From positions 590,416 through 654,415 of the forward strand of contig RQSC01000027.1 of assembly GCA_013416795.1 (NCBI GenBank): DNA of 64,000 nucleotides. The letters run 5' to 3'. A program made the position numbers and the translations under genes. Within the stretch, counting starts at the first letter, position 1, and the number at the start of each line of letters is the position of its first letter. Positions 26,043 to 28,087 of this stretch are shown piece after piece. Under the pieces are notes generated by a model that ran no database searches, was not told the DNA's origin, and was given only the letters and a program-made list of their open reading frames with translations. This DNA comes from Prasinococcaceae sp. CCMP 1430. Lineage: Eukaryota; Plantae; Prasinodermophyta.

Positions 26043-28087
26043 TTACATGTCCTCCTCCTCCTCGTCGTACTCGCCCTCCTCCTCGGCGGTGGCGTCCTGG
26101 TACTGCTGGTACTCGGAGACGAGGTCGTTCATGTTGGACTCGGCCTCGGTGAACTCCATCTCGTCCATGCCCTCACCAGTGTACCAGTGGAGGAACGCCT
26201 TGCGGCGGAACATGGCGGTGAACTGCTCGGACACGCGCTTGAACATCTCCTGGATCGAGGTCGAGTTGCCGATGAAGGTGGCCGCCATCTTGAGGCCCTT
26301 GGGCGGGATGTCGCACACCGACGACTTGACGTTGTTGGGGATCCACTCCACGAAGTACGAGGAGTTCTTGTTCTGCACGTTGAGCATCTGCTCGTCGACC
26401 TCCTTGGTCGACATGCGGCCGCGGAACATGGCCGAGGCGGTGAGGTAGCGGCCGTGGCGGGGGTCGGCGGCGCACATCATGTTCTTGGCGTCCCACATCT
26501 GCTGGGTGAGCTCGGGGACGGTGAGCGCGCGGTACTGCTGCGAGCCACGCGAGGTGAGCGGGGCGAAGCCGACCATGAAGAAGTGGAGGCGGGGGAAGGG
26601 GATGAGGTTCACCGCGAGCTTGCGCAGGTCAGCGTTGAGCTGGCCCGGGAAGCGGAGGCAGCAGGTGACGCCCGACATGGTGGCCGAGATGAGGTGGTTG
26701 AGGTCACCGTTCCACCCCCACCACTCGAAGTCCCACGCCTTCGTCTACAGCATGTCCCGGAGCAACAGCTCGTGGTACGTGAGCAGCCGCAAGAGGTGCT
26801 CGACGTGGACCGACAGGGTGGCGTTGTAGGGCTCCACCACGGTGTCCGACACCTTGGGCGAGGGGAACACCGAGAAGGTGAGCATCATGCGGTCGGGGTA
26901 CTCCTCGCGGATCTTGGAGATCAGGAGGGTGCCCATGCCGGAGCCGGTGCCGCCGCCCATGGAGTGGCACACCTGGAAGCCCTGGAGGCAGTCGCACGAC
27001 TCGGACTCCTTGCGCACGACGTCGAGCACGGAGTCGATGAGCTCAGCGCCCTCGGTGTAGTGGCCCTTGGCCCAGTTGTTGCCGGCGCCGGTCTGGCCGA
27101 ACACGAAGTTGTCCGGGCGGAAGATCTGGCCGTAGGGGCCCGAGCGGACGGAGTCCATGGTGCCGGGCTCGAGGTCCATCAGGATCGCGCGGGGCACGTA
27201 GCGGCCTGCGGACGCGCGGTGGATCGTCGTCAACGGAGCGGGGAGCGCGCGGGGCGGGGAGCGCGCGTGGCGTCAGGTCGATGCCCGCAGCGCGCCAGCT
27301 GGGGCGCGGCGGACGAGGCGGCGGCCACAGGGCGGGCGCCCCCGCGACGCCTATCGCGCGCCGATCTCCGCAAGGAACGAGGGGGAGCGGCGCGGGGACC
27401 GGCGCCGGTCTGGCCGAACACGAAGTTGTCCGGGCGGAAGATCTGGCCGTAGGGGCCCGAGCGGACGGAGTCCATGGTGCCGGGCTCGAGATCCATCAGG
27501 ATAGCGCGGGGCACGTAGCGGCCTGGTCAAACAACACGTCGGTCAGCAGCAAGTACGGGTTGGGATGGGGGCGATGGTGACGTGAGGGCGTGACGCGCCC
27601 TCGCGTGCGCGTCCGGCCGCGGCGATCGCGCTTGCCCGCGCCCGCTGTGTGCGCGCCCGCACGCCTCTCCATGGCTGCAGCGAGGTTTGGGCCAGGCGCG
27701 AGCCGCTTTTGGGTGTTTGCCCGAAAGGTCGTGGCGCAACGCGAGCGCCGCAGCACGCGGCAGCGCTCACGCCGCGCGCAGGCATGCGCGACGCACCGCC
27801 GGTCGCCTCGTTGAAGTACACGTTGATGCGCTCCAGCTGGAGGTCGGAATCGCCGTGGTAGGTGCCGGTGGGATCGACGCTGCGCGGCAGCACGGGGGGC
27901 GGCAGGGGCGGGTCAGCATCGACGTCGCCCCGCGAACGCACAAAAGCGGAAACGCGCCCCGCGGCGGCCGGGCGCGGCGCTGCGGGCGCGGGGGCACGCA
28001 CCCATGCTCGTCGCAGATGACCTCCCAGAACTTGGCACCGATCTGGTTACCGCACTGGCCGCCCTGGATGTGAACGATCTCACGCAT
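26043..28087 (-). CDS. TUBB: Beta-tubulin; as given it is interrupted by a complemented 95-nt block and carries a duplicated exon segment
   Basis: [71 protein letters not shown], and C-terminal [13 protein letters not shown]. Confidence 0.97.

What the first reader, a model, noticed from the sequence alone, without database searches (positions are those of the whole stretch)
26710..26804. 95 nt of the beta-tubulin CDS are complemented in place (mirror sequence)
Between ...NATLSVH and GDLNHL... the minus strand reads [19 protein letters not shown]-stop. Reading the + strand backwards without complementing gives CAG CTC GTG GAG AAC GCC GAC GAG TGC ATG GTG CTC GAC AAC GAG GCC CTG TAC GAC ATC TGC TTC CGC ACC CTG AAG CTC ACC ACC CCC ACC TT. 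That is exactly the missing [31 protein letters not shown](F), with no base gained or lost. A real inversion gives a reverse complement, and no known 5'->3' polymerase chemistry gives complement-only. The most likely cause is a gap-fill, polishing or data-handling error, or an in-silico edit. It would wrongly annotate this tubulin as a pseudogene. If real, it would be unprecedented.
Basis: partly seen in the sequence, partly recalled or inferred. Interest (0 to 1): 0.85.

Follow-up and report, generated by a model that had tools for sequence, protein, structure and literature searches.

The report
Complement-only block breaking a beta-tubulin gene
Ninety-five bases inside an otherwise perfect beta-tubulin gene of a GC-rich marine green alga are written as their base-by-base complement, which is almost certainly a strand-handling error in the assembled record and makes an essential gene look broken.

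Summary
Window 26710-26804 (95 nt) lies in exon 3 of a minus-strand, three-exon beta-tubulin gene and is the in-place complement of what the gene needs.

- **Read backwards without complementing:** it encodes residues 191-222, 32/32 identical to orthologues. It matches the nearest relative's DNA at 93/95 nt. The strand as recorded matches at 1/95.
- **Frame and codon bias:** both run through the block unbroken.
- **Block complemented in place:** the gene gives 443 aa with a single terminal stop.
- **As recorded:** it stops at codon 210.

It is not an inversion, an intron or a decayed pseudogene. No polymerase mechanism gives complement without reversal, so I read it as a strand-handling error in the sequence record.

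It is the only such block I could detect in this window, including 24 kb covered by independent contigs of the same species. None of those contigs spans the block, so there is no read-level proof.

Other first readers of this scan noted the same defect in many conserved genes elsewhere in this genome (52-143 nt, several about 55 nt, one 900 nt). I could not check those notes. If they hold, the fault is systematic.

Biological interest is low. The value is practical, for curating the assembly.

The parts
26710..26804 (-). 95-nt block that is the in-place complement of the beta-tubulin coding sequence (codons 191-222; it ends after the second base of Phe222)
   Evidence: the reverse-only reading gives 32/32 conserved residues and 93/95 nt identity to L029; the recorded minus strand gives 1/95.
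26745..26747 (-). Premature in-frame stop (codon 210) created by the block
26043..27205 (-). Beta-tubulin exon 3 including the stop codon (1163 nt). Outside the block it is intact and strongly codon-biased.
   Evidence: (PF00091 on 26805-27203, PF03953 on 26046-26708).
27797..27879 (-). Beta-tubulin exon 2 (83 nt)
   Evidence: GT-AG introns; the joined CDS is in frame. No difference from the independent contig L002.
28002..28087 (-). Beta-tubulin exon 1 (86 nt, begins [15 protein letters not shown])
27206..27796 (-). Intron 2 (591 nt), which contains a partial duplicate of the start of exon 3
27399..27525 (-). 127-nt duplicate (acceptor CAG plus the first 124 nt of exon 3) of 27082-27208, with 2 synonymous differences
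   Evidence: The first 78 nt of L002 match this copy exactly, including both variant bases.

Best explanation
The block is a defect of the sequence record, not of the organism. A 95-nt stretch of the coding (minus) strand was written into the plus-strand record reversed but not complemented, which is the same as being complemented in place. A strand-orientation bug does this, for example applying only one of the two operations of a reverse complement when a piece taken in the opposite orientation is pasted during assembly, gap closing, polishing or later file handling. The real locus is an intact, expressed, three-exon beta-tubulin gene of 443 residues. Shown: the exact complement relation, the preserved frame, codon bias and protein sequence, the intact rest of the gene, and the absence of any other such block in the testable part of the window. 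Inferred: the non-biological origin and the software step responsible.
For: - Exact in-place complement with sharp single-base boundaries and no indel.
- The reverse-only reading is 93/95 nt identical to the homologous stretch of the nearest relative L029, while the recorded coding strand is 1/95.
- The encoded 32 residues are identical to P0222, P0236 and L031.
- All 31 block codons are used elsewhere in the gene and GC3 is 1.0. The as-recorded reading has 8 of 31 codons never used in the gene.
- GC3 periodicity continues in phase through the block.
- Apart from the block the CDS has no defect: 443 aa, 93.6-96.6% identical to green-plant beta-tubulins, with Pfam PF00091 and PF03953 on the two flanks.
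- Exons 1 and 2 are identical in the environmental population, where the SNPs sit in introns and the 5' flank upstream of the start codon. That is the pattern of a gene under strong constraint, not of a pseudogene.
- The 211-aa and 144-aa ORFs that the block creates are absent from a 15-billion-protein collection that does hold neighbouring genes of this species from many independent assemblies.
- First-reader notes on other pieces of the same genome list many more complement-only blocks in conserved genes: 52, 55, 55, 56 (four times), 66, 74, 87, 102, 126, 143 and 900 nt. I could not check them. If they hold, the cause is systematic and software-like.
Against: - No independent read or contig spans the block. 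All 30 same-species loci fetched stop short of 25728-27447.
- Two scans of JGI metagenome contigs, built to match either version, found nothing.
- I could not name the assembler or the step.
- No N or scaffold join lies at the block; the nearest N is at 28320.
- No paper describing such an assembly error was found.
- The recurrence in other windows rests on unchecked notes.
Confidence: 0.8

Rival explanations
1. A deliberate or accidental in-silico edit made after assembly, such as a spiked-in test anomaly or a corrupted copy of the file, so that the public assembly itself is canonical here.
For: The change is mathematically clean: exact complement, sharp boundaries, no indel. No N or join is nearby. 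The ORFs it creates are not in the protein collection, although two proteins that carry the tool's mask for window-encoded proteins are there (P0314, P0328).
Against: Notes from other windows describe many such blocks, often several in one gene and with a recurring length near 55 nt. That looks more like a k-mer- or node-based software fault than planted edits. The point is unchecked.
Confidence: 0.12
2. Colour-space (SOLiD-type) mis-decoding. Two colour errors of the 'XOR 3' kind turn every base between them into its complement, with no length change.
For: From established knowledge of two-base encoding, this is the one sequencing chemistry whose error model gives an in-place complement from only two miscalls. 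It fits the sharp boundaries and the unchanged length.
Against: Equal numbers of A<->C/G<->T and A<->G/C<->T blocks would be expected, and none is seen. The tubulin exon keeps GC3 at or above 0.95 throughout, and the 24.1 kb compared with independent contigs has no fully mismatched block. The Logan run whose contig matches the window with no mismatches has a high SRR accession number, which I take to be recent; by then the SOLiD platform was, as far as I know, out of use.
Confidence: 0.03
3. The block is physically present in the alga's DNA, so this copy is a very recent beta-tubulin pseudogene made by an unknown mutational process.
For: Nothing direct. Independent contigs break at this gene, which would fit more than one tubulin copy in the genome, so a spare broken copy is not excluded.
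Against: No known replication, repair or recombination process yields complement without reversal; template switching and inversion give the reverse complement, which scores 35/95 here. The gene has no other lesion and the block keeps 32/32 residues and optimal codons. The same oddity is reported in many unrelated essential genes of the same assembly, which would be lethal if real.
Confidence: 0.02
4. The block is an ordinary inversion or a short intron, misread by the first reader.
For: On the minus strand the block begins with GT.
Against: An inversion would put the coding sequence on the + strand, and as-is + against the homologue scores 35/95 where reverse-only scores 93/95. As an intron it ends in AA, not AG. 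It is 95 nt, so removing it shifts the frame and deletes 32 invariant residues.
Confidence: 0.01

Closest known systems
Chromosomal micro-inversion (reverse complement of a segment)
   Same: A sharply bounded internal segment is changed with no base gained or lost, and it disrupts the reading frame's content.
   Different: An inversion gives the reverse complement. Here the segment is the complement only: 93/95 for the reverse-only reading against 35/95 for the inversion reading.
Orientation errors in submitted sequences (a record entered reversed or complemented instead of reverse-complemented); known to me for amplicon and marker-gene records, not checked in papers here
   Same: The same elementary mistake: only one of the two operations of a reverse complement is applied.
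   Different: Those errors affect whole records. Here an internal 95-nt block of a 64-kb assembled region is affected, and reportedly many blocks across the assembly.
SOLiD colour-space decoding errors
   Same: They produce an in-place complement between two miscalled colours, with length unchanged.
   Different: There is no sign of the other two substitution classes that this error model predicts, and no evidence that the platform was used.
Mirror repeats (H-DNA-forming homopurine/homopyrimidine mirror symmetry)
   Same: The relation is reverse without complement.
   Different: Mirror repeats are two arms on one strand, usually short and low in complexity. Here no partner copy exists in the window or in the fetched loci, and the sequence is complex coding DNA.

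Membership tests
Beta-tubulin gene | Tubulin/FtsZ GTPase domain (PF00091) followed by the tubulin C-terminal domain (PF03953) | tested here: met
   PF00091 E=9.6e-41 on 26805-27203; PF03953 E=1.3e-41 on 26046-26708.
Beta-tubulin gene | Full-length uninterrupted CDS of about 440-450 residues, highly similar to known beta-tubulins | tested here: not met
   As recorded there is a stop at codon 210. The CDS is complete (443 aa, 93.6-96.6% identity) only when the block is read as its complement.
Inversion | The segment equals the reverse complement of the ancestral segment | tested here: not met
   the inversion reading scores 35/95 and the complement-in-place reading 93/95.
Spliceosomal intron | GT...AG boundaries, and removal restores the reading frame and the conserved protein | tested here: not met
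   The block starts with GT but ends in AA. It is 95 nt, not a multiple of 3, and removing it deletes residues 191-222.
Decayed pseudogene | Several disabling lesions and relaxed codon or protein constraint | tested here: not met
   There is a single lesion. The rest of the CDS is intact with GC3 0.97, and the block itself keeps 32/32 residues in mirror reading. Exons 1 and 2 are invariant in environmental contigs.
Assembly or data-handling artefact | Raw reads of the same strain disagree with the record | not testable with these tools
   No read access. The contig look-ups, cluster look-ups and two metagenome scans gave no sequence spanning the block.
Assembly or data-handling artefact | The same defect recurs at unrelated places in the same assembly | tested here: inconclusive
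   None besides this block in the window: 24.1 kb against independent contigs, 19 kb of codon-periodic sequence, and a mirror self-comparison. Many are reported by first readers on other pieces, unchecked.

The most novel reading that the evidence does not exclude
The complement-only block really exists in the alga's chromosome, and likewise in the other genes where it was noted. That would imply a mutational or editing process that rewrites a stretch of DNA as its parallel-strand complement.
Probability: 0.02. Interest if true: 0.95.

Novelty: not a real feature. Interest (0 to 1): 0.15.

Why it matters
For biology it matters little: the alga almost certainly has a normal beta-tubulin. For data quality it matters more.

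- As recorded, an essential gene is annotated as truncated or as a pseudogene.
- If the notes from other windows hold, the same fault damages many conserved genes of this public assembly, including the elongation factor EFL, histones, eIF5B, a light-harvesting protein and cohesin. It presumably damages far more non-conserved sequence where nobody can see it.
- The defect is invisible to ordinary quality checks, because length, GC content and the GC3 phase are unchanged.
- A simple scan finds it: blocks that mismatch 100% against independent data while keeping the weak/strong (A/T versus G/C) base pattern, or translation of the reversed sequence.

Tried and rejected
**Finding the same species' tubulin elsewhere**
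The tubulin searches gave only other species, 97% identity at best.
- The COG2 neighbour gave same-species contigs from Tara Pacific ENA scaffolds and Logan runs (98-99.9% identical). All stop at the borders of the tubulin gene. Coverage is 14955-24889, 25092-25727 and 27448-40988.
- Exact look-ups of window ORFs next to or created by the block found nothing.
- Ten tubulin clusters were listed. The eight members whose sequences I read were from other species.
- Two scans of JGI metagenome contigs gave 0 hits: flanks plus a 95-nt gap, then a 14-nt flank plus a weak/strong-coded block that matches either version.

**Looking for more blocks in the window**
- A strand-symmetric Markov test of forward against reversed likelihood was too weak. 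The block is the minimum only at order 5, z = -3.

**Clues to the origin of the block**
- The block has the highest identity to L029 of any 95-nt window in the gene (93 against a mean of 86.6, SD 3.3). Other species pairs also show this region slightly above average, so I make no claim that it is a foreign patch.
- The conserved plant intron site lies 1 nt from the block's 3' boundary, judged from the read-through translations of P0013 and P0029. It is not the same position, so I treat it as coincidence.

**Literature**
- Searches for a described artefact of this kind and for the run accessions found nothing relevant.
- The species could not be named, because the tools hide the window's own source.

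Full report
**Observation.** The window is GC-rich (about 67%) with 199 N. On the minus strand it carries a beta-tubulin gene of three exons with GT-AG introns:

| Part | Coordinates | Length |
|---|---|---|
| Exon 1 | 28087-28002 | 86 nt |
| Exon 2 | 27879-27797 | 83 nt |
| Exon 3 | 27205-26043 | 1163 nt |

Inside exon 3, the minus strand reads ...NATLSVH, then [19 protein letters not shown]-stop and [12 protein letters not shown], then [13 protein letters not shown].... The 95 nt at 26710-26804, read on the + strand from right to left without complementing, give [31 protein letters not shown] plus the first two bases of Phe. The neighbouring bases 26709 and 26805 are normal, so the boundaries are defined to the base. 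With the block complemented in place, the three exons give 1332 nt, that is 443 residues and a single terminal stop. That protein is 93.6-96.6% identical to green-plant beta-tubulins. As recorded, translation stops at codon 210 and residues 191-222 are lost. Pfam finds PF00091 on the piece before the block and PF03953 on the piece after it.

**More than chance.** I fetched the genomic beta-tubulin of the nearest relative available, L029, a Tara Oceans metagenome contig that is 91% identical over the compared CDS. Its homologous 95 nt were compared with all four readings of the block:

| Reading of the block | Identity to L029 |
|---|---|
| Reverse only | 93/95 |
| + strand as recorded (what an inversion would give) | 35/95 |
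| Complement | 27/95 |
| Minus strand as recorded | 1/95 |

The flanking 95-nt stretches score 81 and 83. Every block codon in the mirror reading is used elsewhere in the gene, and its GC3 is 1.0. In the as-recorded reading, 8 of 31 codons are never used in the gene. Third-position GC stays at 0.98-1.0 in the same phase through the block. That is expected, because complementing keeps G/C as G/C. So the block is the in-place complement of genuine, codon-optimised tubulin coding sequence.

**What it is not.**
- *Not an inversion:* the inversion reading scores 35/95.
- *Not an intron:* it starts with GT but ends in AA, is not a multiple of three, and covers 32 invariant residues.
- *Not a decayed pseudogene:* this is the only lesion. 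Exons 1 and 2 and the first 78 nt of the exon-3-like copy are identical in an independent environmental contig, whose differences all fall in introns and in the 5' flank upstream of the start codon.

**Search for independent sequence.**
- *Neighbouring genes.* The neighbouring COG2 gene led to 15 near-identical proteins. A 150-aa ORF at 20239-20688 led to further contigs. In all, 30 same-species loci were fetched, from Tara Pacific ENA scaffolds, Logan runs and a JGI metatranscriptome. They are 98-99.9% identical to the window. One (L032, SRR22824283) has no mismatch at all over 1.8 kb. They cover 14955-24889, 25092-25727 and 27448-40988, and every one ends before the tubulin exon 3.
- *Metagenome scans.* Two scans of JGI metagenome contigs found nothing. 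The first used both flanks with a 95-nt gap. The second used a 14-nt flank plus 36 block positions coded as weak/strong, so that either version would match (pattern validated on the window).
- *Look-ups.* Exact look-ups of the ORFs that the block creates (211 aa and 144 aa), and of small ORFs beside the gene, were all negative. The eight members I read from ten tubulin clusters were other species.

**Is it alone in the window?**
- In the 24.1 kb covered by independent contigs, the only dense mismatch clusters are ordinary divergence or indels, not complement blocks.
- Among 31 strongly, or 43 more loosely, codon-periodic segments (19 kb), only two have stops in both phase-compatible frames. 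One is the tubulin exon, where the extra stop is the one inside the block. The other is 30169-30514, inside the COG2 gene, where independent contigs agree with the window at about 99%.
- Comparing the window and all fetched loci with the reversed window gives no mirror match.

**Context from the scan.** First-reader notes on other pieces of the same genome describe the same thing many times. The blocks are complemented but not reversed, and their reported lengths are 52, 55, 55, 56 (four times), 66, 74, 87, 102, 126 and 143 nt, plus a 900-nt mirror copy. The genes named are those for the elongation factor EFL, histones H2A-H2B, eIF5B, a light-harvesting protein, a SUMO protease, an EHD protein, an RCC1 repeat and a cohesin-like protein. 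Several blocks are described relative to paralogous copies. I could not check them, and none carries a follow-up verdict. If they hold, the fault is systematic. A recurring length near 55 would point to a k-mer- or graph-node-based step.

**Explanation.** No known replication, repair or recombination process gives complement without reversal; template switches and inversions give the reverse complement. The block keeps all its coding information, and the gene is otherwise perfect and essential. The simplest account is a strand-handling error in the record: a piece held in the coding orientation was written into the plus-strand sequence after only one of the two operations of a reverse complement. 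I put this at 0.8.

| Rival | Confidence | Basis |
|---|---|---|
| Edit made after assembly, or a spiked-in anomaly | 0.12 | cannot be told apart without the public record |
| Colour-space mis-decoding | 0.03 | predicts two other substitution classes that are not seen |
| Real genomic block | 0.02 | no known mechanism; the only thing in its favour is that a second tubulin copy is not excluded |

I found no paper describing such an assembly fault.

**Verdict.** This is not a real biological feature. The biological interest is low. The practical interest is for whoever curates or uses this assembly, because the defect silently breaks conserved genes and escapes checks based on length or composition.

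Noticed in passing
window 27399-27525 vs 27082-27208: A 127-nt direct duplicate: the acceptor CAG plus the first 124 nt of tubulin exon 3. It sits inside intron 2, 190 nt upstream of the real exon start, with two synonymous differences (GCT/GAT in place of GCG/GAC). The independent contig L002 matches the upstream copy exactly, including both variant bases, and ends inside it. The copy next to intron 2 therefore exists in nature. Whether the tandem arrangement is real or an assembly loop is open. The 88-aa ORF it creates is not on record.
   Followed up: partly
window 28320: A single N between the tubulin and COG2 genes hides about 325 nt that are present in the environmental contig L002 (its positions 874-1198) and absent from the window. 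Other single Ns lie at 1039, 14296 and 63757, and a 195-N run at 3326-3520.
   Followed up: partly
window 25728-27447 and contig ends at about 23660, 24669, 27448 and 28320-28640: All 30 independent same-species contigs break around the tubulin gene. This fits a multi-copy gene, or one shared across species in the assembly graphs. It is why no independent sequence spans the block.
   Followed up: partly
window 26710-26804 vs L029: Read in mirror, the block is the most conserved 95-nt window of the whole CDS against the nearest relative (93/95; mean 86.6, SD 3.3), and the maximum falls exactly on the block. Four mismatches lie in the 16 nt just upstream. Other species pairs show this region only slightly above average. 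This could hint that the block came from another source or copy, or it could be chance.
   Followed up: partly
Three metatranscriptome contigs (L026-L028, 99% identical) remove an intron at 24890-25091 and encode 238 aa with a weak PF00397 hit. A protein-set entry for this locus holds only the last 77 aa (P0328), so that model is truncated.
   Followed up: partly
window 23663-23700: A 40-nt patch inside the 542-aa ORF (22299-23927, minus strand) where the window has A or T at about a dozen positions and two environmental contigs have G or C. It is not a complement block.
   Followed up: no
window 38962-38978: A 17-nt insertion/deletion polymorphism next to an (AAATCC)n repeat. The window and L002 carry it; L003-L005 lack it.
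   Followed up: no
P0013 and P0029 vs window 26709/26710: The conserved land-plant beta-tubulin intron, judged from read-through translations, sits after the first base of the Phe222 codon. That is one base away from the block's 3' boundary, which falls after the second base. I treat this as coincidence.
   Followed up: no
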